IMG/VR virus record: IMGVR_UViG_3300027749_002876
Coordinates: 186,001-250,000 of that record
Direction: 5' to 3' (one strand)
DNA: 64,000 nucleotides
The position numbers were made by a program, and so were the translations under genes. The notes below the pieces were generated by a model, which did no database searches, was not told the origin of the DNA, and saw only the letters and a list, made by a program, of their open reading frames with translations. Positions within the stretch are counted from its first letter, which is position 1. Each line of letters starts with the position of its first letter. Positions 8,686 through 60,739 of the stretch are shown one piece after another.

Positions 8686-8944
8686 GTTTGGCAGTAATTC
8701 CTGCTTCTTTTTCTAACTGTTCAATAAGATTGGTATATATTTTCTTATAGTATTCATTCATCTTATCAAAATCAGTATCAACTATCTTACCTTCAATTAC
8801 GCACTTTTCTACTTTTTTCTTTGCGTAATCAATAATAACATTGCAGGTTTGTAAGTCTGCTTTTTTAATATTTTTACTTACAGCAACAGACTCATCAATC
8901 TGCCCGCCCGGTCTTCTCATAAATGTAATGAGTAAATATCTCAT
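8672..8944 (-). CDS. hypothetical protein
   Basis: 90 aa; ATGA overlap with the clamp-loader gene. Confidence 0.7.
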   Translation of the reverse strand: MRYLLITFMRRPGGQIDESVAVSKNIKKADLQTCNVIIDYAKKKVEKCVIEGKIVDTDFDKMNEYYKKIYTNLIEQLEKEAGITAKQNGA

Positions 8945-9864
8945 GCCGTCAATTCCGCCAGTGTTGCTGCCAGTGAAATTTCAGGAATCCCTACTAATGG
9001 CAGATTTGCTAAACCATTGCGAATTATAATGATACTTGCGTCTTTCTTCTCTGATGAGTTACCCCACAAGTCTAAGTTATCATACATCCATTTGTAAGTA
9101 TCTTCGACACGTGTAGGGTACATAGCAATGTATTGCATTAGTTGTTGTCTTGCTTCCATAATCTTACCTGCTTTAAACAACTGCGTTGCTTCTAACAATA
9201 GCTCATGTTCACTACTACCCTGTGCTTGTGGCTTCATCAACTTGTTACCACTACTATTAACCTGTAATTGATTTAAACATTTACGCAAATCTGGGTATGT
9301 TGCACGAACATAACTATCTAAATCATCTAAATCAAATTCAACATTCTCAGTAACCAATACTGTAGCGGCTCTTGCGGTGAACTCAGTTTGATCGGTCTTT
9401 GCAATGTGAAATTCATGGCATCGTGATTTTAATGCAGGGATAATTTTATGTTGATAGTTGCATGTGAGAATATATCTTACAGTATCAGCATATGCTTCCA
9501 TATCGTTACGCAATGCCGCTTGTGAAGCTTGTGTTAAGTAATCAGCTTCGTCTAGTAGAACAACCTTGAATTTACCAAACGGCATCGTTTGAACAAAACC
9601 ATTAATCTTATCACGCATATTATCAACACCGTTTTCTCTACTAGCATTGATTTCCAATACGTCATAATCTTCTACTCCAAGTTCGTGTATCAACACTTTT
9701 GCAAGAGTTGTCTTACCAGTACCCGGATCACCACTCAATAGTAAATGCGGTATAGTACCTTCACTTACCCAACCTTCAACTTGTTTCTTTTGTCGTTCAT
9801 TAACAAACACATAATCTTGTACTGTGTTCGGACGATACTTCTCAACCCAAAGTTTGTTCTTCAT
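8941..9864 (-). CDS. gp44: clamp loader AAA+ subunit (gp44/RFC-like)
   Basis: LWVEKYRP, GDPGTGKTT, INAS, DEAD, ALKSRC. Confidence 0.95.
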   Translation of the reverse strand: MKNKLWVEKYRPNTVQDYVFVNERQKKQVEGWVSEGTIPHLLLSGDPGTGKTTLAKVLIHELGVEDYDVLEINASRENGVDNMRDKINGFVQTMPFGKFKVVLLDEADYLTQASQAALRNDMEAYADTVRYILTCNYQHKIIPALKSRCHEFHIAKTDQTEFTARAATVLVTENVEFDLDDLDSYVRATYPDLRKCLNQLQVNSSGNKLMKPQAQGSSEHELLLEATQLFKAGKIMEARQQLMQYIAMYPTRVEDTYKWMYDNLDLWGNSSEKKDASIIIIRNGLANLPLVGIPEISLAATLAELTA

Positions 9865-10154: not shown

Positions 10155-10520
10155 TTAAAATACCTTGTCGCCCATGGTCTCATCCGTCATTGGTTCGTCA
10201 CTGACCATAAGTATGTCGTTAGGATCAATCTTACGAATAACTCTTTCACCAGTGCCGTCATCTATTTTAATCCCTCTAGTCCAACGACCGTGACTAATTA
10301 GGATATACTGCCCAGCTTTCACGTCCAGTTGTGTTGGACCTACAGCATATACTTGTCCCCAACGTGGGCGAATACCAGCAGACTTCATATCATCATTAGG
10401 TAGTAAGATACCACCATTTGTAATACGTACATCAAACTTCATGTCACTAACAATGATAGTGTCACCTATCGCAGTTAATGATTTGATTTTGTGCGGTGCA
10501 AATGCTAATTTTGTTTCCAT
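10155..10520 (-). CDS. groES: co-chaperonin GroES-like protein
   Basis: DTIIV...TNGGILLP...GQVYAVGP...DILMV. Confidence 0.88.
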   Translation of the reverse strand: METKLAFAPHKIKSLTAIGDTIIVSDMKFDVRITNGGILLPNDDMKSAGIRPRWGQVYAVGPTQLDVKAGQYILISHGRWTRGIKIDDGTGERVIRKIDPNDILMVSDEPMTDETMGDKVF

Positions 10521-10888: not shown

Positions 10889-11395
10889 TTATTTTAAAAA
10901 CTCATCTATTGACAAATCATAGTACAAACTATTTATACGATGTATCTCAAGTAAAAACAATACAAAACTTGCTACACTACTACCTCGACCTACACCCCAA
11001 ACAATATTATGTTTACGCATAGTGTCAACCAAATACTTAAGATACTTTAATAGAATAAACATATCACGGTCTTGGAACTTAATTAACTCTTCACCTGCTC
11101 TTTGTAATTCTGCTTCAGTAGTACACTTGTCTAGTACATACTTAGCAATGTCCATATTTAAATATTCAGGTGGCAAGTGCCAAGATGATTGATTAGTGTT
11201 ATCAAATTCCTCTACTGATACTTTTGGGTCAACATACTCAATAAGTTTGGGTATATTTTCCAATTGCAATACATCATTAAAGTTAATAGCTTTCTCTACA
11301 AAAGCATATTTTATTGTACGTAACGGGTCTTGTAGATATAACAAACACAAGTCTGACTCAGTAAAAATAGATTGACCGTAAATATCTGATTTCAT
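10889..11395 (-). CDS. dnaE: DNA polymerase III alpha (DnaE)-like N-terminal palm fragment (start revised to MKSDIYG)
   Basis: QRAGEELIKF...YLVDTMRKHNIVWGVGRGSSVASFVLFLLEIHRINSL matches the DnaE GPGRGS region. Confidence 0.85.
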   Translation of the reverse strand: MKSDIYGQSIFTESDLCLLYLQDPLRTIKYAFVEKAINFNDVLQLENIPKLIEYVDPKVSVEEFDNTNQSSWHLPPEYLNMDIAKYVLDKCTTEAELQRAGEELIKFQDRDMFILLKYLKYLVDTMRKHNIVWGVGRGSSVASFVLFLLEIHRINSLYYDLSIDEFLK

Positions 11396-11401
11396 GTACC
11401 T

Positions 11402-11430
11402 ATTGTAACACAAAACAGATATGAAAACAA
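11402..11430 (-). promoter_or_regulatory. sigma70-type promoter TTGTTT-N17-TACAAT, 6 nt before ATG
   Basis: motif and spacing; no SD. Confidence 0.65.
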
Positions 11431-49506: not shown

Positions 49507-51006
49507 TTACAGCTTGCCTTGCTTTTTTAACATGTCTAACATTTTAGCATCGTCAGGATTGTTCGGATCTAATTTATTACCACCAACCGATAGGTCAGAA
49601 CTGCTTGCTAATTCTTTTTGTAGGGCTGCCAATATTTTTTGTTTGTTTGCAGGAGTCAAATCTTTTAATAAACCCTGAATCTGTTGATATGCTGTTTTAG
49701 TTTTTTGACCTGATGCATTATTGGATGTAGTGTTAGGTGCAGTTGTATTAGGTGGAGTTGTATTATTAGGTGGAGTTGTATTATTAGGTGGAGTATTTTT
49801 TGGTTGTTCTTCAGCTTGAGCATGTTGTACAGCCCATGCCAAATCAGCTAATTTAGGTAATACTGATTTACCTTTATCTTTATTATAAGTTTGTTCTAGC
49901 TCTTTAGCCAATTCTTTTAATCTAGAAACTACTGCCCTATCACTTATAGTGACACCCTTCATAAACTGTGTGAAGAAGTTAGTGATATATTGACTAATAG
50001 ATTGTTTAGACCTTGAAGCTTCAGATAAGATATTTTCAAACAAAAAGTTTAGTTTATCAAATTTAGAATCTTCAGCAACCCTATCACCACCTAAGTTTTG
50101 AGCCATCTGTCCAAATGCATTTTTTCCTGAATTTTTAAGTCTGGAATTGCGCTTAAACTGATTTTCAGGTTTTGTAACAGGTTCCATAATATCTGCTTGT
50201 TTTTTCTGTCTGACATTAGCCGCACTTTTATTAAACTGATCTGCAGGTAATTTACTCATTGGAGACATTTGGTCTTGAGCAGTTTGTGTTGCACTTGTTT
50301 GTTTCTGTTGTCTTGTACTAGTAGCTGTTTTATTAAACTGGTCTGCAGGTAATTTACTCATTGGAGACATTTGGTCTTGAGCGTTCTGAGTAGCAACACC
50401 CTGTTTTTGTTGTCTTGTACTAGTAGCTGTTTTATTGAATTGGTCTGTAGGTAGCTTACTGAATTGACCATTCTGAGACATTTGGTCTTGAGCTACACCG
50501 GCTGCGGCAGCTTGTTTTTCTTGTCTGATTTGCTCTGGAGATTTTTTAGTAGTTGCCAACTGATTAGCCATCTGACCAAAAGCATTTGCTCCTGTTTCTG
50601 GAGATTGTTTAGGAGTTGTTAACTGATTAGCCATCTGACCAAAAGCATTTGCTCCTGCTGTAGGTGCACCTGCAGGTGTCGTAACTGGTGTCGTAACTGG
50701 TGTAACTTTTGGATTAGCAATAGGAGTATTAACTTTTGTTGTTACAGGCTTAGTTACGGCAGAAGAATTACCGGAAGTGTTAAGGTCAATCAATCCACTA
50801 CTAATGCCACTTTGTAATCCACTATACGCACGACTGGTGAAATTCTTAATGAATTCATCTTTAACCATCTGGTCTTGTGTACTTAATACATTCTTGCGAC
50901 CCAATGAGCCTAATCCAGTTCTAAGAGCGGCGGATCCATAATCGCCTATAAATGAGCTTAGGTCTATTTCATTTAGTTTGGGTTTTTTAAATTCAGTCAG
51001 CTTCAC
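49507..51006 (-). CDS. low-complexity repeat protein, probable head-internal
   Basis: MKLTEF...LNE start; internal Q/T/A-rich repeats. Confidence 0.65.
   Translation of the reverse strand: MKLTEFKKPKLNEIDLSSFIGDYGSAALRTGLGSLGRKNVLSTQDQMVKDEFIKNFTSRAYSGLQSGISSGLIDLNTSGNSSAVTKPVTTKVNTPIANPKVTPVTTPVTTPAGAPTAGANAFGQMANQLTTPKQSPETGANAFGQMANQLATTKKSPEQIRQEKQAAAAGVAQDQMSQNGQFSKLPTDQFNKTATSTRQQKQGVATQNAQDQMSPMSKLPADQFNKTATSTRQQKQTSATQTAQDQMSPMSKLPADQFNKSAANVRQKKQADIMEPVTKPENQFKRNSRLKNSGKNAFGQMAQNLGGDRVAEDSKFDKLNFLFENILSEASRSKQSISQYITNFFTQFMKGVTISDRAVVSRLKELAKELEQTYNKDKGKSVLPKLADLAWAVQHAQAEEQPKNTPPNNTTPPNNTTPPNTTAPNTTSNNASGQKTKTAYQQIQGLLKDLTPANKQKILAALQKELASSSDLSVGGNKLDPNNPDDAKMLDMLKKQGKL
50195..50655 (-). 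repeat. intragenic repeats: about 3 x 102-111 bp (QDQMS..SKLP.DQFNK) and 2 x GANAFGQMANQL
   Basis: near-identical DNA copies; an additional 18-bp PPNNTT tandem near 49745-49796; boundaries approximate. Confidence 0.85.
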
Positions 51007-51277: not shown

Positions 51278-52720
51278 TTATTTCTTTAAACTATTAAGCA
51301 TTGCCTTCAATTTTGACCCCTGCACATCTGCTATAATACGCTTGTTTTCAGGCTCAAGTATCTCTCCTGTAGCTTGGTCTATGATAGGTTCAGTTGATAA
51401 TAACACAGATTGTGGCTTTAAGCTACTCATAATATCATTAGCACTGGGTTTGGGAGTATAACTATTCTCATTGTCAGGATCGCTATCGCTGATACGCATT
51501 GTCTCAATATCATAATCTAAGTCAATCTTTTGACCTACACCAGTTGAACTACGTGACTTCATACACTGAATTTGATACTTTCCACGCTCTCGCATACTGC
51601 GACTTGTAAAGATACCAAACACGTTATCTGCTGTATTAATCTTACTGATACCACCAGCAATATGACTATGGTCAAACTCAATCTCATCAACTGCACTACG
51701 ATTTAACTGACTTGCAGTAACCATCAATATGCCTAATTCTTTTGCTAAGTTACGCAATTCTTCTGCTACATACTTGTCTTTGATAAACTGGTCGTTAGGA
51801 TTAACTTTAACAGAAACTGGCATAACCAAATCTAAGTAGTCAACCATTACAAAGTCAATCTTAATACCTGTTTGAATTTGTACTTCTTTTAAATAAGCAC
51901 GAATGTCATTTACGTTACTTTGTGCAGGTAATCCTTTAACACGATACTGCCCAGACTTCTTTCCGACCATCTTAACTTTAAGACTAGTAGTATCAATGTC
52001 TTTACGAATTGCTTTAGTTCCCATCATAGTCAACATAGCATCTGTTCTTAATGATGTTAGTTCTTCACTCAGTTCTAGTGTTACATATACACCACTCATT
52101 CCCTGTTTCAACCAGTTCAAAGCAATATTCATCATAACCAAACTTTTACCTGAACCACTGCCACCTGCAAAGATGTTGAGTTCACCACGACTAAATCCAC
52201 CATATAAGATACGATCCATTTGTGGCCAGCCTGTACTTACTTGTCCACCATTGTTAAAGTATTTGTTGATACGTGCTGCCGGGTCATAGAAGTAATCAGT
52301 TCCCATGTCTTTTTGTAAACTAATTTGTACCGCATCTTTAATCAATTTCTCAACAGGATCAAAGTCACCCTTCTCAAGTAAGTCTGCCGCTTTAAGAATA
52401 GCACGTTCTAATTCTTGTCGTTTAGTAAATGATTCAAACTCATCCAAGAACCAATCAAATTGATTAGGACTGAAGTTGGGTATAATATCAATGTCTTGCC
52501 CTGTAATAGCTTTGATTTGTGCAGGATCGGGCAAAATACTATATTTTGTTGAATGCTCTTTGTACAAATTTGCAACCGGGCGCAATGACCTATCAAAATT
52601 ATCACTGTTCAATATGTTCATAACTCTGGTATAGAGTTCTGCTTCAGTAATCATTATACGCAAAAATATCTTTTGCACTTCTATACCATACTCTTTTTTA
52701 TTTTCGTAATCTTTTTTCAA
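51278..52720 (-). CDS. gp41: replicative DnaB-family helicase (gp41-like); start uncertain
   Basis: GGSGSGKS, TLEL, VDYLD, TASQLNR, KSRSS. Confidence 0.92.
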   Translation of the reverse strand: MKKDYENKKEYGIEVQKIFLRIMITEAELYTRVMNILNSDNFDRSLRPVANLYKEHSTKYSILPDPAQIKAITGQDIDIIPNFSPNQFDWFLDEFESFTKRQELERAILKAADLLEKGDFDPVEKLIKDAVQISLQKDMGTDYFYDPAARINKYFNNGGQVSTGWPQMDRILYGGFSRGELNIFAGGSGSGKSLVMMNIALNWLKQGMSGVYVTLELSEELTSLRTDAMLTMMGTKAIRKDIDTTSLKVKMVGKKSGQYRVKGLPAQSNVNDIRAYLKEVQIQTGIKIDFVMVDYLDLVMPVSVKVNPNDQFIKDKYVAEELRNLAKELGILMVTASQLNRSAVDEIEFDHSHIAGGISKINTADNVFGIFTSRSMRERGKYQIQCMKSRSSTGVGQKIDLDYDIETMRISDSDPDNENSYTPKPSANDIMSSLKPQSVLLSTEPIIDQATGEILEPENKRIIADVQGSKLKAMLNSLKK

Positions 52721-53675
52721 TTTTTTTCCTTTGTAGTTCTATTTTGATTTTGCTTGCCGTTGCACTACTCAATATACTGAGCAATGTAGGCAACTTACCA
52801 TACTTAACTACCGCGTCATTCACATCTTTAACATCATCTTCCCAATTGGGAATACTAATACTATAACCTAATTCTAATGCTCTATCACATGTTTCTAAAC
52901 CAGTTTCATCTCTATCGGGAATAAAAATAATTTGTTTATTTAATTGTGCTAGTAATTGTACTTGAGTATCATTGATTGTATTATGTGTTAACGCACAAGC
53001 ATTTAAACTTAATGCATCAAAAATACCTTCAACTAACAAACATACTTCCCAATTAGGTTTCTGAAAGTCATAACCAAATACATAGCCAGGTTGTTGCTCG
53101 TTAATATATTTTGGGATTTTGTTATCTAAGAATCTACTTGTATGACCTACAATTTTGTTCTTGTAAGTATAGGGGATAATAATTCTGTTTGACTGTCTGC
53201 CAGTGTCATTAGGTGTAACTAAGAACGGGTAGTCATTATAATTTATCAGTCTTGCAGACAAGTAATCAACGTATACTTTGTGTAATGGATTACTTACATC
53301 TAATATTTCAGCTTCAGGGAGTTTATGTTCTTCAAATTTTATTTTTGTTTTTTGTTTCTTAAGATGAGCAAAATCTAACAGATCCCTATATTGCAGACTT
53401 TCTAAACTCCATCGTTGAATTTGAATATCATCTATACCACACCATTTTAATAAACTTTTAGTAATCTCACTAATTTGTTTACCTAAGGTGAACCCACATT
53501 TAAACCCACAATTGAAACAGGCATATGACCAGTTTTCTCCGTCTTTTTTAACACCACCTCTACCTCTAGTGTCAGATTTGTGCCCACGATGATGACAGCA
53601 TATAGCATTAAAGCTATGCCATCCACCTTGTGTTATTTTTTTCTTTCCGGGAATTACTGACAGTATATCAAACAT
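52698..53675 (-). CDS. gp61: DNA primase (gp61-like)
   Basis: N-terminal zinc ribbon (CC...CFNC), RIIIP, TOPRIM EGIFD, DRDETG, KDVND. Confidence 0.88.
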   Translation of the reverse strand: MFDILSVIPGKKKITQGGWHSFNAICCHHRGHKSDTRGRGGVKKDGENWSYACFNCGFKCGFTLGKQISEITKSLLKWCGIDDIQIQRWSLESLQYRDLLDFAHLKKQKTKIKFEEHKLPEAEILDVSNPLHKVYVDYLSARLINYNDYPFLVTPNDTGRQSNRIIIPYTYKNKIVGHTSRFLDNKIPKYINEQQPGYVFGYDFQKPNWEVCLLVEGIFDALSLNACALTHNTINDTQVQLLAQLNKQIIFIPDRDETGLETCDRALELGYSISIPNWEDDVKDVNDAVVKYGKLPTLLSILSSATASKIKIELQRKKIEKRLRK

Positions 53676-53723: not shown

Positions 53724-54491
53724 TTATCTTGACAAAATATTGGTTACTGCCCCGTTATTACTTTCAAATTGCATTCTAATATACGGGTGATAACCTTGAA
53801 CCACGTATCCTATTGTATCAGTTTCAGCAGTATAAGTATCGGTTAATATGGGATACCAATCACCGTCTACAATAGTAGAACCTTCAATAACAATATTGCC
53901 ATAGAAGTCACTATATTGTGCTTGTAGTGTTAATATAGGACTATCATTTGTATCTATAACACTGGTATAATATGTTAGGTCACTATCACTATTACCTTCA
54001 GGGTTAGTATTTGGGAATACTTGTCCAGTAGGAATACTGATTGGCATTGAAGGAATAAAGCTAGGTAATACACTGTTAACAATATTCATATCGCCGCGGG
54101 CACCTGCATTGCTATCAACAAATACAGGATAGTCAAACTCTCCTACAGGAATTTCTAATGAGTAATAACATTTTTGTGCGTCAATACCTGCAAGGTCTGC
54201 TGGATTTAAAAATAATGCGGCAATACCGGTTGCAGGTAATTGTAGTGTTAATGCTTTTTGTAATAGGACCACGTTACCTTCATAATTGATAATTCTACAG
54301 GTTATTGATTTACCAGTAATATCTACGGGTTTTTGTTCTTGGTTTAAGAACTGAAACTGAATCTGGTTGTCTACACCCTTATTAAGAGTTAGAGGTTTGG
54401 CATACTGAGGCATATAGCTCCTTGGGGAAAATCCTGTTAAAAGTATAACGATTTGTCTTTGTGTATAGACGAAAACTTGAGTTGAGTACAT
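53724..54491 (-). CDS. virion structural protein (start revised to MYSTQV)
   Basis: GATAAATA 5 nt before ATG; beta-rich; KGVDN.IQFQFLNQEQKPVD. Confidence 0.6.
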   Translation of the reverse strand: MYSTQVFVYTQRQIVILLTGFSPRSYMPQYAKPLTLNKGVDNQIQFQFLNQEQKPVDITGKSITCRIINYEGNVVLLQKALTLQLPATGIAALFLNPADLAGIDAQKCYYSLEIPVGEFDYPVFVDSNAGARGDMNIVNSVLPSFIPSMPISIPTGQVFPNTNPEGNSDSDLTYYTSVIDTNDSPILTLQAQYSDFYGNIVIEGSTIVDGDWYPILTDTYTAETDTIGYVVQGYHPYIRMQFESNNGAVTNILSR

Positions 54492-54558
54492 AATGATATT
54501 TATCAAAATATATTGCCAGGCATTCCTGTGATAAATATTTCGGTCAATAATTATAATA

Positions 54559-54939
54559 ATGATTCAAAACGAATTTTTTAACAAACTATCTCAAAATCAC
54601 CCGTTCATAACCATATGTTCATACGCCAACCAAGATTATGTTGGAATAGTACAAAATAGAGATGATATAGTCACCACTATATATGACTATGGAGCTATTA
54701 TTGATAATATAGCTAGAGAAAAATTCTTAGAATTAGGTGATATTTGGTGGTGGGAAAGTAATAGACTTATCCCTATTAACCTGTTCTTAAAAGACGAATG
54801 GACTATCTTTAAACCATATCTTAGAACATTCAATAACAAAAGCTTAACAGTCATACACGGCCCAACGTGTAGTATGTCTGAACTAAACAAACGTAGAAGT
54901 AAACGCCGTAGTATTACCCTTGTTAAACGGATTTTGTAA
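54559..54939 (+). CDS. hypothetical late protein
   Basis: 126 aa; GATAAATA at 54530-54537. Confidence 0.75.
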   Translation: MIQNEFFNKLSQNHPFITICSYANQDYVGIVQNRDDIVTTIYDYGAIIDNIAREKFLELGDIWWWESNRLIPINLFLKDEWTIFKPYLRTFNNKSLTVIHGPTCSMSELNKRRSKRRSITLVKRIL

Positions 54940-55495
54940 GTAAGTTCATATGTACTACTACTAGTTGGCTATAGGATAAGCTGTGACTTTTTTTGAAACT
55001 ATACCCATCGTCTCCTTTGTCCCAGATAGTCATACTGACTTCTTTCCAACTCTTACCAATTAAATGTCTTTTAGCTGGGCGAATCAATGCTAAAAACATT
55101 GCTAATCTAGGAATACTATCAATAGGTTCAGGCATTTTTTTAATAGATTGATAATGATTTCCTAAATGAATTAGTTTCTCAACAAATTCTCTGTCATTTA
55201 ACTTAGACCAATCAGGGTCTGCCATCAATTCAACTAAATGTTTTTCATTTTGTACTTGTGAGTATACATGAACATTCAATAAATCTAATTTAAAATATCC
55301 ACGACTTTCTGCCACAACATAATCAATTGCTGCCATATCATTTACAGGATCATAAGGAATATCAGTAACATATACACCAGTAGCATGTTTACGCATAGGT
55401 TTAGCATTACGCATAGCGGCAGGCGTGTGTTTAATAAGTTGTAATAACTTGTCTCTATCACCAAAATCAATGTCAATGTCTGATTCTATTCTCAT
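54923..55495 (-). CDS. dnaE: DnaE-like minimal catalytic fragment
   Basis: DIDIDF, HATGVYV, YFKLDLL, LALIRP, GYSFKKSH..Y in canonical order within 190 aa. Confidence 0.85.
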   Translation of the reverse strand: MRIESDIDIDFGDRDKLLQLIKHTPAAMRNAKPMRKHATGVYVTDIPYDPVNDMAAIDYVVAESRGYFKLDLLNVHVYSQVQNEKHLVELMADPDWSKLNDREFVEKLIHLGNHYQSIKKMPEPIDSIPRLAMFLALIRPAKRHLIGKSWKEVSMTIWDKGDDGYSFKKSHSLSYSQLVVVHMNLLTKSV

Positions 55496-56046
55496 CTTGG
55501 AGGTGCTACCAATTCTGCTTTCATTAATTTAGTATACGCTTTTTGTACAACAATAGCTTGTCTTTCGGCATCTTCTACTGCTTTGTGACTAGTCACGTGA
55601 CCACCGTCTTTAAGACTTACGCCGGTTATCTCGTACAAGGTACGTGTATCTCTAACGGTGTAGAAAGGCCAAGGGATTCGCATTTCAAGGTTTCGCCAGG
55701 CCGACTCTGCCACAACCACATCGAATGATGCACCGTTACTCCAAACAGCACGGCGATTCCAACAAAACTTATAAAGTATTTCCATACATTCTCTAAACGG
55801 AATTCTGCCGTGTTCTCCCATAGCCTCTTCAAGTGCTGCCGGGCTTTGCTCACTCCACCATCGTAATGTATCTTCATTTATACTCCTATTATAAATTTCT
55901 GTTTGTTCTTCAATCGTTGGTCGTAACTCTAATCTTTCAACAACACCACTACCTTTAGGATCAAATCTTACTGCGCCAATGGTTAGTATAACACAATCAG
56001 GACTTGTGTCAAGTGTTTCCATATCAATCATTATATCTTGTGCCAT
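55492..56046 (-). CDS. DEDDh 3'-5' exonuclease
   Basis: IDMETL, WSNGASFD, RDTRT, HKAVEDA. Confidence 0.88.
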   Translation of the reverse strand: MAQDIMIDMETLDTSPDCVILTIGAVRFDPKGSGVVERLELRPTIEEQTEIYNRSINEDTLRWWSEQSPAALEEAMGEHGRIPFRECMEILYKFCWNRRAVWSNGASFDVVVAESAWRNLEMRIPWPFYTVRDTRTLYEITGVSLKDGGHVTSHKAVEDAERQAIVVQKAYTKLMKAELVAPPR

Positions 56047-56047
56047 A

Positions 56048-56398
56048 TTATGCCTGTAATGTTTTCCAAATATATTTCTTCTCTAAGTAATCTTGTAGCT
56101 TCAATGCTTCATCTTCACTATTGAATGCCACACCTTTAATCTCATACATATCTTCTAGGTATCTAGCATATTCTCCATTAATGTCTTGTGCCCAAGTGTT
56201 TAATGTAATCCACATAATATCAAGTTCGTCTTTTACAATCGACATGCTAATACCAACTTCATCACTACCGATATCTTCAAATAGTACATCTAACAGTTTT
56301 TTCTTAATAGCAAACGTTTGAATGTTACCCCATTTAGGCCATGATACTAGGAATTTACCTTTTTGTAAAGAGGTTATGGGAAAAGGTTTATTGTTCAT
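56048..56398 (-). CDS. hypothetical protein (possible divergent array member)
   Basis: VAFNSEDEA motif; ATGA coupling. Confidence 0.65.
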   Translation of the reverse strand: MNNKPFPITSLQKGKFLVSWPKWGNIQTFAIKKKLLDVLFEDIGSDEVGISMSIVKDELDIMWITLNTWAQDINGEYARYLEDMYEIKGVAFNSEDEALKLQDYLEKKYIWKTLQA

Positions 56399-56661
56399 TG
56401 GAATTTTAATAAAAATATTAGGTACTTCTTTTCGTCAACAATCTCATAACCATCTGTTATATTACCATTAACTATGTTCATCTTTAAGCCATATTGTCCA
56501 GTAAGATAATCTTCAAAATCATATGCGTCAAACTCTTTGTTCTGTGCCATATATTCTTTACGAACTTTCTTCAATGCTTCCCAATAGTTCCAACGATTTC
56601 TACGTTGGTCTATACTTGGATCATCGTCATCGTAGTCCTGTATGTGAGGTATTGATGCCAT
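56395..56661 (-). CDS. small hypothetical protein, 'LRW'-type family (start revised to MASIPH)
   Basis: ends EIVDEKKYLIFLLKFQ; TGATG overlap. Confidence 0.7.
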   Translation of the reverse strand: MASIPHIQDYDDDDPSIDQRRNRWNYWEALKKVRKEYMAQNKEFDAYDFEDYLTGQYGLKMNIVNGNITDGYEIVDEKKYLIFLLKFQ

Positions 56662-56897
56662 CAACTCCACCTTAACGTGAACAAAATGTAATCTTTTTCA
56701 TATCTAAACTTGAAACTGATTAGGTCATCGTCAGTTATACCCCATCTACAATGTCTTTCGTGTTTACCAATATTGGTTTCTAACCATTTAACTATTTCGT
56801 TATATTTGTCAAGATGTTTAGCATGTACTGAACATTCATGCCAACCGGGTTTGGTGTTTTCCCATCCAGCATCATAGTCATAATGTTCATATATCAT
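56661..56897 (-). CDS. small hypothetical protein, 'LRW' family (start likely MIYEHY)
   Basis: ends FKFRYEKDYILFTLRWS; ATGA overlap. Confidence 0.7.
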   Translation of the reverse strand: MIYEHYDYDAGWENTKPGWHECSVHAKHLDKYNEIVKWLETNIGKHERHCRWGITDDDLISFKFRYEKDYILFTLRWS

Positions 56898-57106
56898 TGC
56901 CATCTCAGCGAAAACCAAAAAGCATCTTTTTCATTTCTAAAATGCCAGCTATAACTTTTAGGATCATCTCTTCCTACCCAAAAACATGTCCAATTGCCTG
57001 TCTTTCTACCAACAGCAAACCATCGTTCTCCTATGTTATCTCTGCACCATTCTTCTACTTCGTATCCAAGTTTCTTAGTAATTACAGTGTATGGCAATTC
57101 TTTCAT
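56894..57106 (-). CDS. small hypothetical protein, 'LRW' family (start revised to MKELPY)
   Basis: ends WHFRNEKDAFWFSLRWQ; ATGA overlap. Confidence 0.7.
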   Translation of the reverse strand: MKELPYTVITKKLGYEVEEWCRDNIGERWFAVGRKTGNWTCFWVGRDDPKSYSWHFRNEKDAFWFSLRWQ

Positions 57107-57321
57107 CCCCACCTCAACATAAAATAACTTGCATTACTATCATTGTAAAAAGTAAAAACTGTATGTTGTTCCATAATAGGTTCAGAACTAAAATCATCCC
57201 ACATTTCTTTGTAATAAGCAAAGTCAAAATCAACTCCTTGAACCCAACCCATTTTTCTTACCTCTGATACTATATCTAAAACTCTAGTTACGTTTATTTC
57301 CTTGATAATTATATTAGCCAC
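57103..57321 (-). CDS. small hypothetical protein, 'LRW' family
   Basis: ends FTFYNDSNASYFMLRWG; GTG start. Confidence 0.7.
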   Translation of the reverse strand: MANIIIKEINVTRVLDIVSEVRKMGWVQGVDFDFAYYKEMWDDFSSEPIMEQHTVFTFYNDSNASYFMLRWG

Positions 57322-57511
57322 AGATCAACTCAAATAATATAGCATCACGCTCATCCTTAAAGTAAAAATCCATATAATCTTCAGTCACATGTGTTTCATA
57401 TTTGTCTCCGGGTAAACCAAACTTTTCTACCGCTATTGCACAAGTTTCATTCCATATAGGATGTTTGTGATGTGTTTGCCATGTTATACGAACTCTAGTA
57501 CCCGCCGGCAT
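57314..57511 (-). CDS. small hypothetical protein, 'LRW'-type family
   Basis: ends FYFKDERDAILFELICG. Confidence 0.7.
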   Translation of the reverse strand: MPAGTRVRITWQTHHKHPIWNETCAIAVEKFGLPGDKYETHVTEDYMDFYFKDERDAILFELICG

Positions 57512-58217
57512 TCAATAATTCCTTAACTTGTTTCACATTATCTGTTTCACGGTTAAACTTAATCTTCCATAGTTCTGGATTAATATAATCAATGACCATC
57601 TTTACATGTGATTCATTTAAACTATCTAAGAACTTTACACCACTGTCACTTTGATATAACATCCATGGACTAATCTTACCATTGGTAATACTATGACATA
57701 TCTTGTTAATATTACCATAACACAAATAGTCTTTAGCTAGTATCCCTTCTTTTTCTGCTAAATCTATGGTAGTTTGGACACTACGTGCAATCGCATCAAA
57801 CGGATCTTCACTACGTAAATACTCAATTAAATATTTTGTATATACAGTATCAGTTGCCCATGTGTCAACTTTAATTTGATTCTTTAATAACCAATCTACA
57901 TATCTACTAACGTTGATTGCATTAATGTTTGCACAATGACTACCAAACTTAACAAAGGCTGTATAATAAGCACTGCGAATAAATTCTTCGTATGTTTTTG
58001 CTTTTTTAGTTGAAGTATTCTTCTTATAAAATTGTATCCAAGCTTGAAACCCAATACGATTACCCTGCAATTCTTTGTTCATCCAACGTTGTTTATTTTC
58101 ACATAGGTGTTTAGCCATAGTAGATTCACGTAGGAACTCTCTATTGCAAAAATCACAACCATACTTGATTGTGTTATCAGTTGCCTCTGTCTTTTTCGTA
58201 TTGAGTGATATCTTCAT
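57495..58217 (-). CDS. hypothetical protein with N-terminal zinc-finger-like motif
   Basis: YGCDFCNREFLRESTMAKHLC. Confidence 0.7.
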   Translation of the reverse strand: MKISLNTKKTEATDNTIKYGCDFCNREFLRESTMAKHLCENKQRWMNKELQGNRIGFQAWIQFYKKNTSTKKAKTYEEFIRSAYYTAFVKFGSHCANINAINVSRYVDWLLKNQIKVDTWATDTVYTKYLIEYLRSEDPFDAIARSVQTTIDLAEKEGILAKDYLCYGNINKICHSITNGKISPWMLYQSDSGVKFLDSLNESHVKMVIDYINPELWKIKFNRETDNVKQVKELLNAGGY

Positions 58218-58770
58218 CTGTAACCGTTTGACTTAATACTTCTATATCTGCTATTTTTAAATGGGGATATATTTCTGCAAGATGCATTTTCTTTCTTTGC
58301 TCTTGCACGAATGCTTTTGAATATTCTGTTAAATCTTCACTACTTGCTTTAGGATAAATCTTTGTAAAATATTCTTTTATTTCTTTTACTTGTGCAGGTT
58401 CTTTTAATAAACTTACACGTTCTTTGATTTGCGGTAACCATTGATGATATTGTTTACCTAATCCGGGACTAGCCGCACATAACATGTACCATTGTAGTTT
58501 AGGATGCTTACTAACACTTTCATTAAAGAAGTATTTGTTAGCATTGTATTCTGTACTCATCACATAATAACCTGCAATATCTCCTGAACCTTTCACGTAG
58601 CTTAACCACTTGATTAACATGAATGGCACAAACTTGCGCTGTTGTTCAGGGGTCAGTCTATCGTAATAACCATAATCTTTCTTGTCTAGTGCCGCAATGG
58701 CTTCGAACAAGTTAAAATCTTGATTCTCTAACTTTTCATCAGTAGGGATAATCTTTTTTGTTGCCATCAA
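58177..58770 (-). CDS. probable clamp loader small subunit (gp62-like)
   Basis: FVPFMLIKWLS...N...KLQW...HQWL pattern and size. Confidence 0.6.
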   Translation of the reverse strand: MMATKKIIPTDEKLENQDFNLFEAIAALDKKDYGYYDRLTPEQQRKFVPFMLIKWLSYVKGSGDIAGYYVMSTEYNANKYFFNESVSKHPKLQWYMLCAASPGLGKQYHQWLPQIKERVSLLKEPAQVKEIKEYFTKIYPKASSEDLTEYSKAFVQEQRKKMHLAEIYPHLKIADIEVLSQTVTDEDITQYEKDRGN

Positions 58771-59273: not shown

Positions 59274-59302
59274 ATTATAACACTTTCTTATCTGTATGTC
59301 AA
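59274..59302 (-). promoter_or_regulatory. consensus sigma70 promoter TTGACA-N17-TATAAT, 6 nt before ATG
   Basis: exact consensus; no SD. Confidence 0.85.
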
Positions 59303-60739
59303 CTTTTCTAAGTCAAACGGGTAGTTTGCTTCTTTATAAAAAGCCTTACGTTGGGTTAAATGTCTTTTGGCAAACTTACAACTGCTTGTTACATCCCAAA
59401 TTTGTACAAAGTCTTTATCTTCTGCTTTACGAATGCCTCGACCGATGCTTTGGATAACACGGACGAAGGATTTTCCAGGTTCAATGAGAACCAGATTAAA
59501 AATCCTAGGTATGTTGATACCAACAGCGGCGACACCATAAGTCGCAACAATAATTTTATTTGTACTGGTTGCAATTTCATCATATTCTTCTTTCCTTTCA
59601 ACCATATTAGTAGCACCACTCACAAATACACTATCGGGTAATCTACTAACAATTTCTTTACCTGCATTAACTCTATCAACTAGAATCAATACATTGCCTG
59701 TTTCTTTAATCTTTAATATTAGTTGTGCAATAGCATCTAGTCTATTTGTATCCTCAAGCAAGTGTTTCAACTCACTTTGGTAATTACTAAACTCTACATC
59801 ATCTTTTAATTGAACAATATTAACGTGACATTGTGCTAGTACACCTTGATCCTGTAACTCACTTGCACTTAGTTTACTGATAACAGGACCTAAACTAACA
59901 AACAATGATTGTGCTTCAAACTTAGCTTTAGGGATAGTTCCGGTCAATCCCCAGCGAATCGGAACCTTAGCAAAGGCCCCAGTCAGTAATGTCTTTAGTG
60001 CATCTGCTTTGGCCATGTGAACCTCATCTACCATGACACAAACAACACCTTCAATGAAGTCCATAATATCTGCTTCACCTGCTTTTGTTTTCTTAAGCAT
60101 ATTGTTAAGACTCTGCCAAGTACAAATAGTATGTGTTTTATTGTACTCTTTGCGATCACCAAAGTATACACCAACATCTAATCCAAGATTAATGTAATCT
60201 GCTTCTGTTTGTGTTACTAAACTCTTGTTCGGAACGATAACAATACTACGACCATATTGTTCTATACTATAACTTAGTGCGGCAGTCATCAATGTTTTAC
60301 CCGCACCTGTAGCAATCTCTTGTAGTGATTGCGGGTTCTTTAGAAAGTTATTAACAATAGTAATTTGATAATCACGTAGCTCTACGGGGGTGCCTTCTTT
60401 GGGATGACCTTTAGGCCAGTTCTTATGAGCGAACGTTGATTCGGACACTTCAGCGAATTCAAAGGTTGTTGTATAATCCCTAGTATCATCCAACTCAATA
60501 TCATATCCTGCTCTGTCTAATACGGGAAGTATTTCTTCCAATAGATTAATATATGTACTACCAGCAAGACTGAAATAACTTACTTTGCCATTCCATCTTC
60601 CTAGTCGTACTGCAGGTAGATATCGTGCACCGGGAACTTCATACTCAAACATTTTCATTAGTGCTTTACGCTCTGCTAATTCAAGACCTTCTATCTTTAC
60701 ATTAACTTCATCTTTAACGATTATTTTACATTGTTTCAT
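59288..60739 (-). CDS. uvsW: SF2 DNA helicase UvsW
   Basis: LRDYQ, ATGAGKT, DEVH, GLTGT, QSIGRGIR. Confidence 0.92.
   Translation of the reverse strand: MKQCKIIVKDEVNVKIEGLELAERKALMKMFEYEVPGARYLPAVRLGRWNGKVSYFSLAGSTYINLLEEILPVLDRAGYDIELDDTRDYTTTFEFAEVSESTFAHKNWPKGHPKEGTPVELRDYQITIVNNFLKNPQSLQEIATGAGKTLMTAALSYSIEQYGRSIVIVPNKSLVTQTEADYINLGLDVGVYFGDRKEYNKTHTICTWQSLNNMLKKTKAGEADIMDFIEGVVCVMVDEVHMAKADALKTLLTGAFAKVPIRWGLTGTIPKAKFEAQSLFVSLGPVISKLSASELQDQGVLAQCHVNIVQLKDDVEFSNYQSELKHLLEDTNRLDAIAQLILKIKETGNVLILVDRVNAGKEIVSRLPDSVFVSGATNMVERKEEYDEIATSTNKIIVATYGVAAVGINIPRIFNLVLIEPGKSFVRVIQSIGRGIRKAEDKDFVQIWDVTSSCKFAKRHLTQRKAFYKEANYPFDLEKLTYR

What the first reader, a model, noticed from the sequence alone, without database searches (positions are those of the whole stretch)
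54923..56046. Thumb-less DnaE core coupled to a DEDDh exonuclease
In the 190-aa fragment DIDIDF is only about 27 residues from HATGVYV, whereas cellular DnaE has over 100 residues (the thumb) between them. The fingers are also condensed, and the clamp-binding and OB regions are absent. The three catalytic Asp equivalents (DID and KLD) are retained. The gene is ATGA-coupled to a 3'-5' exonuclease. Inference: a low-processivity enzyme for priming, gap filling or end modification rather than the replicase.
Basis: partly seen in the sequence, partly recalled or inferred. Interest (0 to 1): 0.6.

Follow-up and report, generated by a model that had tools for sequence, protein, structure and literature searches.

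The report
Split mini DNA polymerase III, jumbo phage
This gene encodes the catalytic half of a two-piece, stripped-down bacterial-type DNA polymerase that one group of giant phages carries beside its main polymerase; the family was described by computer analysis in 2021, so this copy is a new member, not a discovery.

Summary
ORF 54923-55495(-) encodes 190 aa that carry the DnaE palm and finger motifs with the thumb deleted. Motif spacing is 31 residues here against 110 in E. coli DnaE. Its start codon overlaps the stop codon of a DEDDh exonuclease gene in ATGA.

The AlphaFold model (pLDDT 91.6) matches only C-family polymerases (Z up to 9.1, 181-187 of 190 residues aligned). D6, D8, D10 and D71 are invariant in 132 homologues.

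The other half of the palm (GRGS NTP-binding unit) is a separate 174-aa gene 44 kb away (10889-11413, -). It co-occurs with the C-fragment in 15 of 15 complete relatives. The two halves are predicted to bind (ipSAE 0.90, best control 0.01).

This is the "minimal split Pol III alpha" of group 2.2 jumbo phages (Iyer et al. 2021). All six complete or near-complete relatives tested also carry a family B polymerase; the one scanned has its own exonuclease domain. No PHP or HhH gene, and no finger match outside the C-fragment gene, was found in five complete relatives. The enzyme is therefore an accessory polymerase, not the replicase.

The exonuclease linkage holds only in this clade: 73 of 80 close loci, 0 of 55 distant loci. 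The neighbour kept everywhere is a convergent 126-aa ORF of unknown function. The enzyme's role remains inferred.

The parts
54923..55495 (-). C-terminal subunit of the split minimal Pol III alpha (190 aa). It holds the Mg-binding Asp residues D6 and D8 (plus D10) and D71, a thumb-less palm half and condensed fingers (motifs RP at 139-140 and KKSH at 168-171).
   Evidence: phrog_11778, E 6.8e-56. AF2 model pLDDT 91.6. VIA-align Z 5.8-9.1 to DnaE and PolC over 181-187 of 190 residues for 12 of the 13 top entries (175 for the other); next unrelated hit Z 3.0. Invariant residues in 132 homologues. Motif spacing against E. coli DnaE.
10889..11413 (-). N-terminal (NTP-binding) subunit of the same polymerase. 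It is 174 aa from the TTG start; relatives start at the ATG at 11395, giving 168 aa. It carries the invariant WGxGRGSS motif and ends at DEFLK, the equivalent of E. coli ERFLN 389-393.
   Evidence: PF07733 positions 20-94 of 260, 34.5 bits against a cut-off of 23.9. phrog_11127. The profile hits Taq alpha 379-455 and E. coli alpha 322-393. Present in 15 of 15 complete records that carry the C-fragment. Predicted complex with the C-fragment: ipSAE 0.90 against best control 0.01.
55492..56046 (-). DEDDh 3'-5' exonuclease (184 aa, Rv2179c-like). Its stop codon overlaps the C-fragment start codon (ATGA). The linkage is specific to this clade and a physical partnership is unproven.
   Evidence: PF16473, E 2.5e-31. 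phrog_255. Junction sequence. Adjacency statistics. Family distribution. Nearest solved chain is 8kel, 'Exodeoxyribonuclease', E 0.0017.
54559..54939 (+). Convergent 126-aa ORF (phrog_11637) whose 3' end overlaps the C-fragment gene by 17 nt. It is the neighbour conserved across the whole family. The model shows a small beta-barrel with a helical insert and a basic C-terminal tail. It is a candidate accessory or DNA-binding partner; its function is unknown.
   Evidence: phrog_11637, E 8.9e-31. Found just downstream of the C-fragment, on the opposite strand, in 52 of 55 distant loci; an opposite-strand ORF of matching size holds the same position in three isolates. AF2 pLDDT 85.3. Only weak fold matches: Z <= 4.4, Sm/SH3-like. 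No Pfam family.
52698..53675 (-). Toprim DNA primase. Part of the conserved synteny block downstream of the C-fragment (context only).
   Evidence: PF13155 and phrog_47. Same gene order in Phosso, Atu_ph07 and Turkey3.
51278..52720 (-). DnaB-like replicative helicase in the same synteny block (context only).
   Evidence: PF03796, E 2.3e-19; phrog_19, E 3.4e-68.

Best explanation
The 190-aa gene product is the C-terminal subunit of the phage-specific 'minimal split DNA polymerase III alpha' of group 2.2 (Rak2/121Q/PA5oct/Atu_ph07-like) jumbo phages. It provides the metal-binding Asp strand(s), the rest of the Pol-beta-like palm without the thumb, and a shortened finger module.

The missing first half of the palm, with the GRGS NTP-binding loop, is a separate 174-aa protein encoded 44 kb away. 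The split falls in the loop between the ERFLN helix and the DxD strand. There is no room for an intein, so the two chains most likely assemble non-covalently by completing one beta-sheet (inferred from the predicted complex).

The enzyme lacks thumb, PHP, clamp-binding, HhH and OB parts, and these phages carry a T4-like family B polymerase. It is therefore most likely a distributive, accessory, templated DNA polymerase. Plausible jobs are extending primers at the primase-helicase, next to whose genes it is always encoded, or filling gaps in repair and recombination. It is not the replicase.

In this clade a DexA/Rv2179c-like DEDDh exonuclease gene has come to lie directly upstream and may act with it, but that link is not part of the family's conserved design.

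Shown: identity, fold, conserved catalytic residues, the split, co-occurrence with the N-fragment and with PolB. Inferred: assembly, templated activity, accessory role.
For: - Family and fold. The top 13 VIA-align hits are all C-family polymerases, Z 5.8-9.1. They span E. coli alpha 397-779, Taq 459-836 and Mtb 416-806.
- D6, D8, D10, H37, G40, K69, D71, R139, P140, K142, F167 and H171 are invariant in 132 homologues down to 34% identity.
- The N-fragment is found and matches PF07733 and DnaE 322-393.
- Co-occurrence of the two fragments: 15 of 15 complete IMG/VR records; 94 and 95 phage records with nearly the same breakdown by host genus.
- Predicted N+C complex: ipSAE 0.90 in three runs against best control 0.01. 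At least 99% of contacts agree between runs and partner pLDDT is at least 86. That mark was reached by 58 of 80 solved complexes and 2 of 110 mismatched pairs. C residues 9-11 touch N residues 139-140.
- PolB is present in Phosso, Atu_ph07, Turkey3, G001, G002 and G003. The G002 PolB has its own exonuclease domain.
- Each genome tested has only one PF07733 hit. Five complete relatives have no PHP or HHH_6 match, and the only finger-domain matches are sub-threshold and lie inside the C-fragment gene itself.
- The synteny C-fragment / phrog_11637 / virion protein / primase / DnaB is conserved.
- Prior description in PMC7824862. Earlier notes of a 'truncated Pol III alpha' in CBB and Atu_ph07.
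Against: - There is no biochemical or genetic evidence anywhere in the library searched.
- Pfam does not recognise the C-fragment. Sequence-profile and Foldseek statistics against solved DnaE are weak: E 0.073 and E 8.8e-3.
- The complex score may partly reflect the model's memory of single-chain DnaE structures (caveat printed).
- The window's own 91-kb record is only about 22% complete and has no PolB hit. PolB is therefore inferred from relatives, among them a 524-kb record whose C-fragment is 100% identical.
- The accessory role rests on missing domains and gene neighbourhood only.
Confidence: 0.75

Rival explanations
1. Polymerase-proofreader core. The mini polymerase and the upstream DEDDh exonuclease form an obligate alpha-epsilon-like complex, made in equal amounts through the ATGA overlap. 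The exonuclease edits the mini polymerase's errors.
For: - ATGA overlap.
- The exonuclease lies upstream of the C-fragment in 73 of 80 close loci; in most of these the two genes abut or lie within 12 nt.
- G001 and G002 have this exonuclease as their only stand-alone DEDD exonuclease hit and no DnaQ-type (PF00929) gene.
- PolB has its own exonuclease domain and does not need this one.
- Rak2-like phages keep a different DnaQ-like gene about 5 kb upstream of the C-fragment.
Against: - The exonuclease is absent within 3 kb in 55 of 55 more distant loci and is not adjacent in Phosso, Atu_ph07 or Turkey3.
- In some close loci extra DNA of 311-931 nt is inserted between the two genes.
- G007 (200 kb) and G023 (480 kb, complete) have the polymerase and no PF16473 hit.
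- The exonuclease family is found in 506 phage records, and the best 60 listed are all phages under 80 kb; the C-fragment search matched only 95 records, of which the 40 listed are nearly all over 280 kb.
- The PHP domain that docks epsilon in E. coli (recalled) is missing.
- The nearest solved relative is a 227-aa 'Exodeoxyribonuclease' (8kel). From memory this is T4 DexA-like, a salvage nuclease.
Confidence: 0.25
2. The protein is not a templated DNA polymerase. The reduced Pol-beta-like nucleotidyltransferase adds nucleotides without a template (end modification, tailing) or makes a nucleotide signal.
For: - Loss of thumb, HhH, OB and clamp contacts removes most of the DNA duplex grip.
- C-family palms belong to the Pol-beta-like nucleotidyltransferase superfamily (established knowledge).
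Against: - The finger motifs shared with DnaE (RP, K/N-K-S-H) are invariant or nearly so. In DnaE these lie in the finger domain that handles the incoming dNTP and the template (recalled).
- The whole 190 aa superposes on the palm and fingers of replicative enzymes.
- The gene always sits in the replication module.
Confidence: 0.1
3. The gene is a decaying remnant of a captured host dnaE (a pseudogene fragment) with no function.
For: - It is very short compared with the 1160-aa DnaE.
- The CBB authors called the companion N-fragment 'truncated'.
Against: - Intact ORFs occur in at least 7996 protein clusters and 95 phage records.
- The catalytic residues are invariant at 34% overall identity.
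- The model is confident and compact.
- The partner gene strictly co-occurs.
- The fragment ends fall precisely at a loop.
Confidence: 0.02
4. It is the phage's main replicase. Processivity is supplied in trans by the clamp and other subunits.
For: - A clamp loader gene lies 1 kb from the N-fragment.
- Primase and helicase genes lie beside the C-fragment.
Against: - A T4-like PolB with its own proofreading domain is present in every complete or near-complete relative tested.
- No clamp-binding, HhH or OB module was detected.
Confidence: 0.05

Closest known systems
Minimal split DNA polymerase III alpha of group 2.2 jumbo phages (Iyer, Anantharaman, Krishnan, Burroughs & Aravind, Viruses 2021; PMC7824862)
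   Same: - Two stand-alone proteins from distant genes: an N-terminal NTP-binding unit and a C-terminal Mg- and template-binding unit.
- No other Pol III domains.
- Accompanied by a family B polymerase.
- Same phage group: hits to Rak2, 121Q, PA5oct, Atu_ph07, CBB and Phosso at 32-49% identity.
   Different: - This copy belongs to an uncultivated clade; there is no megablast match to any deposited phage.
- In this clade a Rv2179c/DexA-like exonuclease gene abuts the C-unit and no DnaQ-type gene was found.
- I did not find the conserved convergent 126-aa neighbour mentioned in the parts of that paper I read.
Bacterial DnaE (Pol III alpha; E. coli 2hnh, Taq 3e0d/2hpi, M. tuberculosis 5lew) and PolC (9qpc)
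   Same: - Pol-beta-like palm with Asp residues matching D401, D403 and D555.
- GRGS loop, RP and (N/K)KSH finger motifs.
- Structural superposition at Z 5.8-9.1 over the whole 190 aa.
   Different: - Split into two chains.
- No PHP domain, no thumb (79 residues fewer), fingers about 90 residues shorter.
- Nothing after the KSH helix: no beta-binding, HhH, OB or tau-binding parts.
- Together about 360 aa against 1160 aa.
E. coli alpha-epsilon polymerase-proofreader core
   Same: A C-family polymerase gene next to a DEDDh 3'-5' exonuclease gene in this clade.
   Different: - The exonuclease is PF16473, not DnaQ/PF00929. BLASTP against the Turkey3 epsilon-like protein gives E 33.
- The PHP docking domain is absent.
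- The linkage is not conserved outside this clade.
Cyanobacterial split-intein DnaE (dnaE-n / dnaE-c), recalled from memory
   Same: A C-family polymerase encoded by two distant genes.
   Different: - There are no intein sequences. The N-fragment ends at the ERFLN equivalent and the C-fragment starts 5 residues before the DxD strand, leaving no room.
- The split site differs: before the DxD strand here, before the NKSH motif there.
- Assembly must be non-covalent.
B. subtilis DnaE / eukaryotic Pol alpha as primer-extending second polymerases (functional analogy, recalled)
   Same: A second polymerase beside the main replicase, with its gene linked to the primase and helicase genes.
   Different: There is no evidence here for RNA-primer extension. 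This is analogy only.

Membership tests
Split minimal Pol III alpha of group 2.2 jumbo phages (PMC7824862) | C-terminal unit with the Mg-chelating Asp residues and a template-binding (finger) subdomain | tested here: met
   D6, D8, D10 and D71 are invariant. The model superposes on DnaE palm and fingers. phrog_11778.
Split minimal Pol III alpha of group 2.2 jumbo phages (PMC7824862) | Separate N-terminal NTP-binding unit encoded by a distant gene | tested here: met
   10889-11413(-), 44 kb away. PF07733 above its cut-off. Present in 15 of 15 complete records.
Split minimal Pol III alpha of group 2.2 jumbo phages (PMC7824862) | No other Pol III alpha domains in the genome | tested here: met
   One PF07733 hit per genome in three relatives. 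No PHP or HHH_6 match in five complete relatives, and the only finger matches are sub-threshold and lie inside the C-fragment gene. The limit is HMM sensitivity.
Split minimal Pol III alpha of group 2.2 jumbo phages (PMC7824862) | Co-occurs with a family B DNA polymerase and a T4-like replisome | tested here: met
   PolB is present in six relatives, including a 524-kb record whose C-fragment is 100% identical. The window has a clamp loader, UvsW helicase, primase and DnaB. The window's own 91-kb fragment has no PolB hit.
Bacterial replicative DnaE/PolC | Single polypeptide with an N-terminal PHP domain | tested here: not met
   Two genes. No PF02811 hit in five complete relatives.
Bacterial replicative DnaE/PolC | Thumb domain between the DxD strand and the HAGG strand | tested here: not met
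   31 residues against 110 in E. coli. The model shows only one helix and one strand there.
Bacterial replicative DnaE/PolC | Clamp-binding, HhH and OB C-terminal modules | tested here: not met
   The protein ends 19 residues after KKSH. No PF14579 hit.
Bacterial replicative DnaE/PolC | Catalytic Asp triad in a Pol-beta-like palm | tested here: met
alpha-epsilon type polymerase-proofreader pair | Conserved association of the polymerase with a DnaQ-family exonuclease that docks on the PHP domain | tested here: not met
   The exonuclease is PF16473, not PF00929. Adjacency holds only in the close clade. PHP is absent. Binding itself was not tested.
Split-intein DnaE | Intein halves at the split ends | tested here: not met
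   The fragment ends abut DnaE positions 393 and 397 with no extra sequence.

The most novel reading that the evidence does not exclude
The mini polymerase may be a multi-subunit primer-extension enzyme of the phage primosome. In this reading the N and C fragments form the catalytic core. The universally linked convergent 126-aa protein (small beta-barrel plus basic tail) supplies in trans the DNA grip that the deleted thumb and HhH modules gave. In this clade the abutting DEDDh exonuclease serves as a trans proofreader. The complex would extend primers and hand off to PolB, a phage counterpart of Pol alpha or of B. subtilis DnaE.
Probability: 0.12. Interest if true: 0.7.

Novelty: new member of a known kind. 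Interest (0 to 1): 0.35.

Why it matters
At about 360 residues in two chains, this is, as far as I know, the smallest predicted C-family polymerase. Iyer et al. proposed it as a model of the ancestral Pol III catalytic module.

It is very abundant in metagenomes (at least 7996 clusters at 90% identity), yet I found no experimental work on it in the library searched.

This analysis adds a few points to what was published:
- a confident fold model and a residue-level map onto DnaE;
- a predicted N+C interface that passes its controls;
- evidence that the missing domains are not encoded elsewhere;
- the finding that exonuclease linkage is clade-specific, while a 126-aa convergent gene is the conserved neighbour.

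These points give a concrete set of proteins to co-express and assay. The basic finding itself is already in the literature.

Tried and rejected
- Megablast of 54000-58000 against deposited phages gave no match.
- Pfam on the C-fragment gave nothing at E <= 1.
- The HMM profile of the C-fragment against PDB sequences gave only marginal DnaE hits (E 0.073).
- Foldseek E-values were weak (best 8.8e-3), although the top 11 hits were all Pol III alpha. VIA-align was needed for a clear answer.
- The promoter and terminator scan of 54300-58400 was no better than shuffled sequence.
- The 126-aa neighbour has no Pfam family, no Atlas feature hit and only weak Sm/SH3-like fold matches. I leave its function open.
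- The PA5oct omics paper has no statement on these genes in its main text.
There is therefore no expression evidence, and read laying was not used.
- Complex prediction was busy at the first try, then ran. Its single job went to the N+C pair. The exonuclease-polymerase and 126-aa-polymerase pairs could not be tested.
- The large representative search (search of protein representatives) was not used, because the word search and family scans already settled the family.
- Rejected readings: pseudogene remnant, main replicase, split intein. Reasons are given under the rival explanations and the membership tests.
Full report
**Context.** The window is bases 8903-72902 of a 91-kb IMG/VR viral record that CheckV rates about 22% complete. 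GC content is about 36%. Around the finding lie the genes of a T4-like replication module:
- DnaB-like helicase, 51278-52720
- Toprim primase, 52698-53675
- UvsW-like helicase, 59288-60739
- clamp loader, 8941-9864

No deposited phage is similar at the DNA level. The proteins place the phage among the Rak2/121Q/PA5oct/Atu_ph07/Phosso jumbo phages.

**Observation.** ORF 54923-55495(-) encodes 190 aa. I mapped its motifs against E. coli K-12 DnaE, translated from L176.

| Motif (phage / E. coli) | Phage position | E. coli position |
|---|---|---|
| DIDIDF / DFDVDF | 6 | 401 |
| HATG / HAGG | 37 | 511 |
| KLD / KFD | 69 | 553 |
| IRPA / FRPG | 138 | 638 |
| KKSH / NKSH | 168 | 757 |
| protein end | 190 | 1160 |

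- D6, D8 and D71 therefore correspond to catalytic D401, D403 and D555.
- The segment between the DxD strand and the HAGG strand is 79 residues shorter, which is the size of the thumb.
- The RP-to-KSH stretch is about 90 residues shorter.
- Everything after the KSH helix is missing.
- The start codon overlaps the stop codon of the upstream gene as ATGA.
- The upstream gene (55492-56046) is an Rv2179c-like exonuclease (PF16473, E 2.5e-31). Its sequence shows D8, E10, D109, H154 and D159.

**Fold and conservation.** The C-fragment matches phrog_11778 'DNA polymerase' at E 6.8e-56.
- I took 132 homologues from IMG/VR loci, spanning 34-100% identity. D6, D8, D10, H37, G40, K69, D71, R139, P140, K142, F167 and H171 are invariant in all of them.
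- An AlphaFold2 model built on 34 diverse sequences has pLDDT 91.6 and pTM 0.82.
- Foldseek's top 11 PDB hits are all Pol III alpha, but with weak statistics.
- VIA-align gives Z 5.8-9.1 for 13 C-family polymerase entries, with 181-187 of 190 residues aligned in 12 of them. These span E. coli alpha 397-779, Taq 459-836, M. tuberculosis 416-806 and PolC 970-1299. The next unrelated hit has Z 3.0.

**The other half.** A six-frame Pfam search of the whole record found one PF07733 match. It is at window 10889-11413(-), 44 kb away.
- This 174-aa protein (phrog_11127) carries an invariant WGxGRGSS motif and ends with DEFLK.
- Its profile aligns with Taq alpha 379-455 and E. coli alpha 322-393.
- The structural alignment of the C-fragment starts at E. 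coli residue 397.
- The break therefore lies in the loop between the ERFLN helix and the DxD strand. No residues are left over for an intein.
- The two genes co-occur in 15 of 15 IMG/VR records that are at least 90% complete.
- They are found in 94 and 95 phage records, with nearly the same breakdown by host genus.
- A predicted complex of the two chains scores ipSAE 0.90 in three runs, against 0.01 for the best of three controls. At least 99% of contacts agree between runs and partner pLDDT is at least 86. That mark was reached by 58 of 80 solved complexes and 2 of 110 mismatched pairs.
- C residues 9-11 touch N residues 139-140. This is what continuation of one palm sheet would look like.
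- The score may owe something to the model's memory of single-chain DnaE structures.

**Already known.** Iyer et al. (Viruses 2021, PMC7824862) describe exactly this. They report a phage-specific minimal Pol III alpha in group 2.2 jumbo phages. [quoted passage not shown] They suggest it could help synthesise one strand or act in repair. Earlier genome papers had noted a 'truncated Pol III alpha' in CBB and Atu_ph07. I found no experimental study.

**Is it the replicase, and are the missing parts elsewhere?**
- PF00136 (family B polymerase) hits occur in Phosso, Atu_ph07 and Turkey3.
- They also occur in G001 (524 kb, C-fragment 100% identical), G002 (352 kb) and G003.
- The G002 PolB has its own exonuclease domain (PF03104, E 1.3e-22).
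- Each genome tested has a single PF07733 hit.
- Five complete relatives have no PHP and no HHH_6 match. The only finger-domain matches are sub-threshold and lie inside the C-fragment gene itself.
- 'Not the replicase' is supported. It is inferred from relatives, because the window's own record is a fragment without a PolB hit.

**The exonuclease.**
- Among 80 loci whose C-fragment is 70-100% identical, 73 have the exonuclease upstream. In most of these the two genes abut or lie within 12 nt. In the rest, 311-931 nt are inserted between them. Four loci have 4 kb of upstream sequence and no exonuclease.
- Among 55 loci at 34-58% identity, none has it within 3 kb.
- It is not adjacent in Phosso, Atu_ph07 or Turkey3.
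- The exonuclease family occurs in 506 phage records. The best 60 listed are all phages under 80 kb, whereas the C-fragment search matched only 95 records, of which the 40 listed are nearly all over 280 kb.
- Rak2-like genomes instead keep a DnaQ-type (PF00929) gene about 5 kb upstream of the C-fragment. They also have a weak PF16473 hit about 8 kb from the N-fragment.
- G001 and G002 have only the abutting PF16473 gene. G023 has neither type. G007 (200 kb) has the polymerase but no PF16473 hit.
- The nearest solved relative is a 227-aa 'Exodeoxyribonuclease', 8kel, at E 0.0017.
- A functional pairing in this clade is possible. It is not a property of the family, and I could not test binding.

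**A better-conserved neighbour.** The 126-aa ORF 54559-54939(+) (phrog_11637) converges on the C-fragment gene and overlaps its 3' end by 17 nt.
- A homologue lies just downstream of the C-fragment, on the opposite strand, in 52 of 55 distant loci. In the three isolates an opposite-strand ORF of matching size holds the same position.
- Its model (pLDDT 85.3) is a small beta-barrel with a helical insert and a basic C-terminal tail.
- Fold matches are weak: Z <= 4.4, of Sm/SH3/Hfq type.
- It has no Pfam family.
- It may be a partner of the polymerase, or it may simply be part of the conserved block C-fragment / this ORF / virion protein / primase / DnaB.

**Distribution.**
- At least 7996 clusters at 90% identity match the C-fragment.
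- Among one genome for each of 185,579 prokaryotic species, only nine loci match. All nine are on MAG contigs. This is consistent with a family restricted to phages.

**Verdict.** The finding is real and accurately described. It is a new member of a family that has already been published. The most likely mechanism is a non-covalent two-chain, thumb-less C-family polymerase that acts as a distributive helper of PolB at the primosome or in repair. The exonuclease coupling is a local feature of this clade. The role is inferred, not shown.

Noticed in passing
window 54559-54939 (+): A convergent 126-aa ORF (phrog_11637) overlaps the 3' end of the C-fragment gene by 17 nt. A homologue lies just downstream on the opposite strand in 52 of 55 distant loci. 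The model shows a small beta-barrel, a helical insert and a basic tail. No family or fold assignment was possible.
   Followed up: partly
window 56395-57511 (-): Five tandem small ORFs (65-91 aa) lie upstream of the exonuclease. They share a C-terminal motif of the form F-x-x-(E/D)-(K/R)-D-x-x-x-F-x-L-(R/K)-(W/F). The relative L005 has about 25 small ORFs in the same place. This looks like an expanding array of small paralogues of unknown function.
   Followed up: partly
window 49507-51006 (-): A 499-aa low-complexity protein has internal repeats (QDQMS...KLP(A/T)DQFNK(T/S)A..., PPNNTT runs), seen in the translation. In relatives the ORF in this position differs in length and is absent in L007.
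   Followed up: no
window 10155-10520 (-): A GroES/Cpn10-like gene (PF00166, E 1e-5; phrog_931 'head morphogenesis') lies two genes from the N-fragment. The clamp loader is at 8941-9864.
   Followed up: no
G001 (IMGVR_UViG_3300027749_002876, 524,565 bp): This record has a C-fragment 100% identical to the window's. It carries two family B polymerase frames (917 aa and 1117 aa) at opposite ends of the contig. It could be a real second polymerase or a chimeric or concatenated assembly.
   Followed up: no
Rak2-like records G009-G021: A weak PF16473-like exonuclease hit lies about 8-9 kb from the N-fragment gene. A DnaQ-type PF00929 gene lies about 5 kb upstream of the C-fragment gene. Each polymerase half thus has a DEDD exonuclease gene within 5-9 kb in that clade.
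   Followed up: partly
window 53724-54506 (-): A 260-aa protein annotated in relatives as a virion structural or tail fibre protein (phrog_1084) sits inside the replication block between the polymerase gene and the primase. It holds this position in all relatives examined.
   Followed up: no
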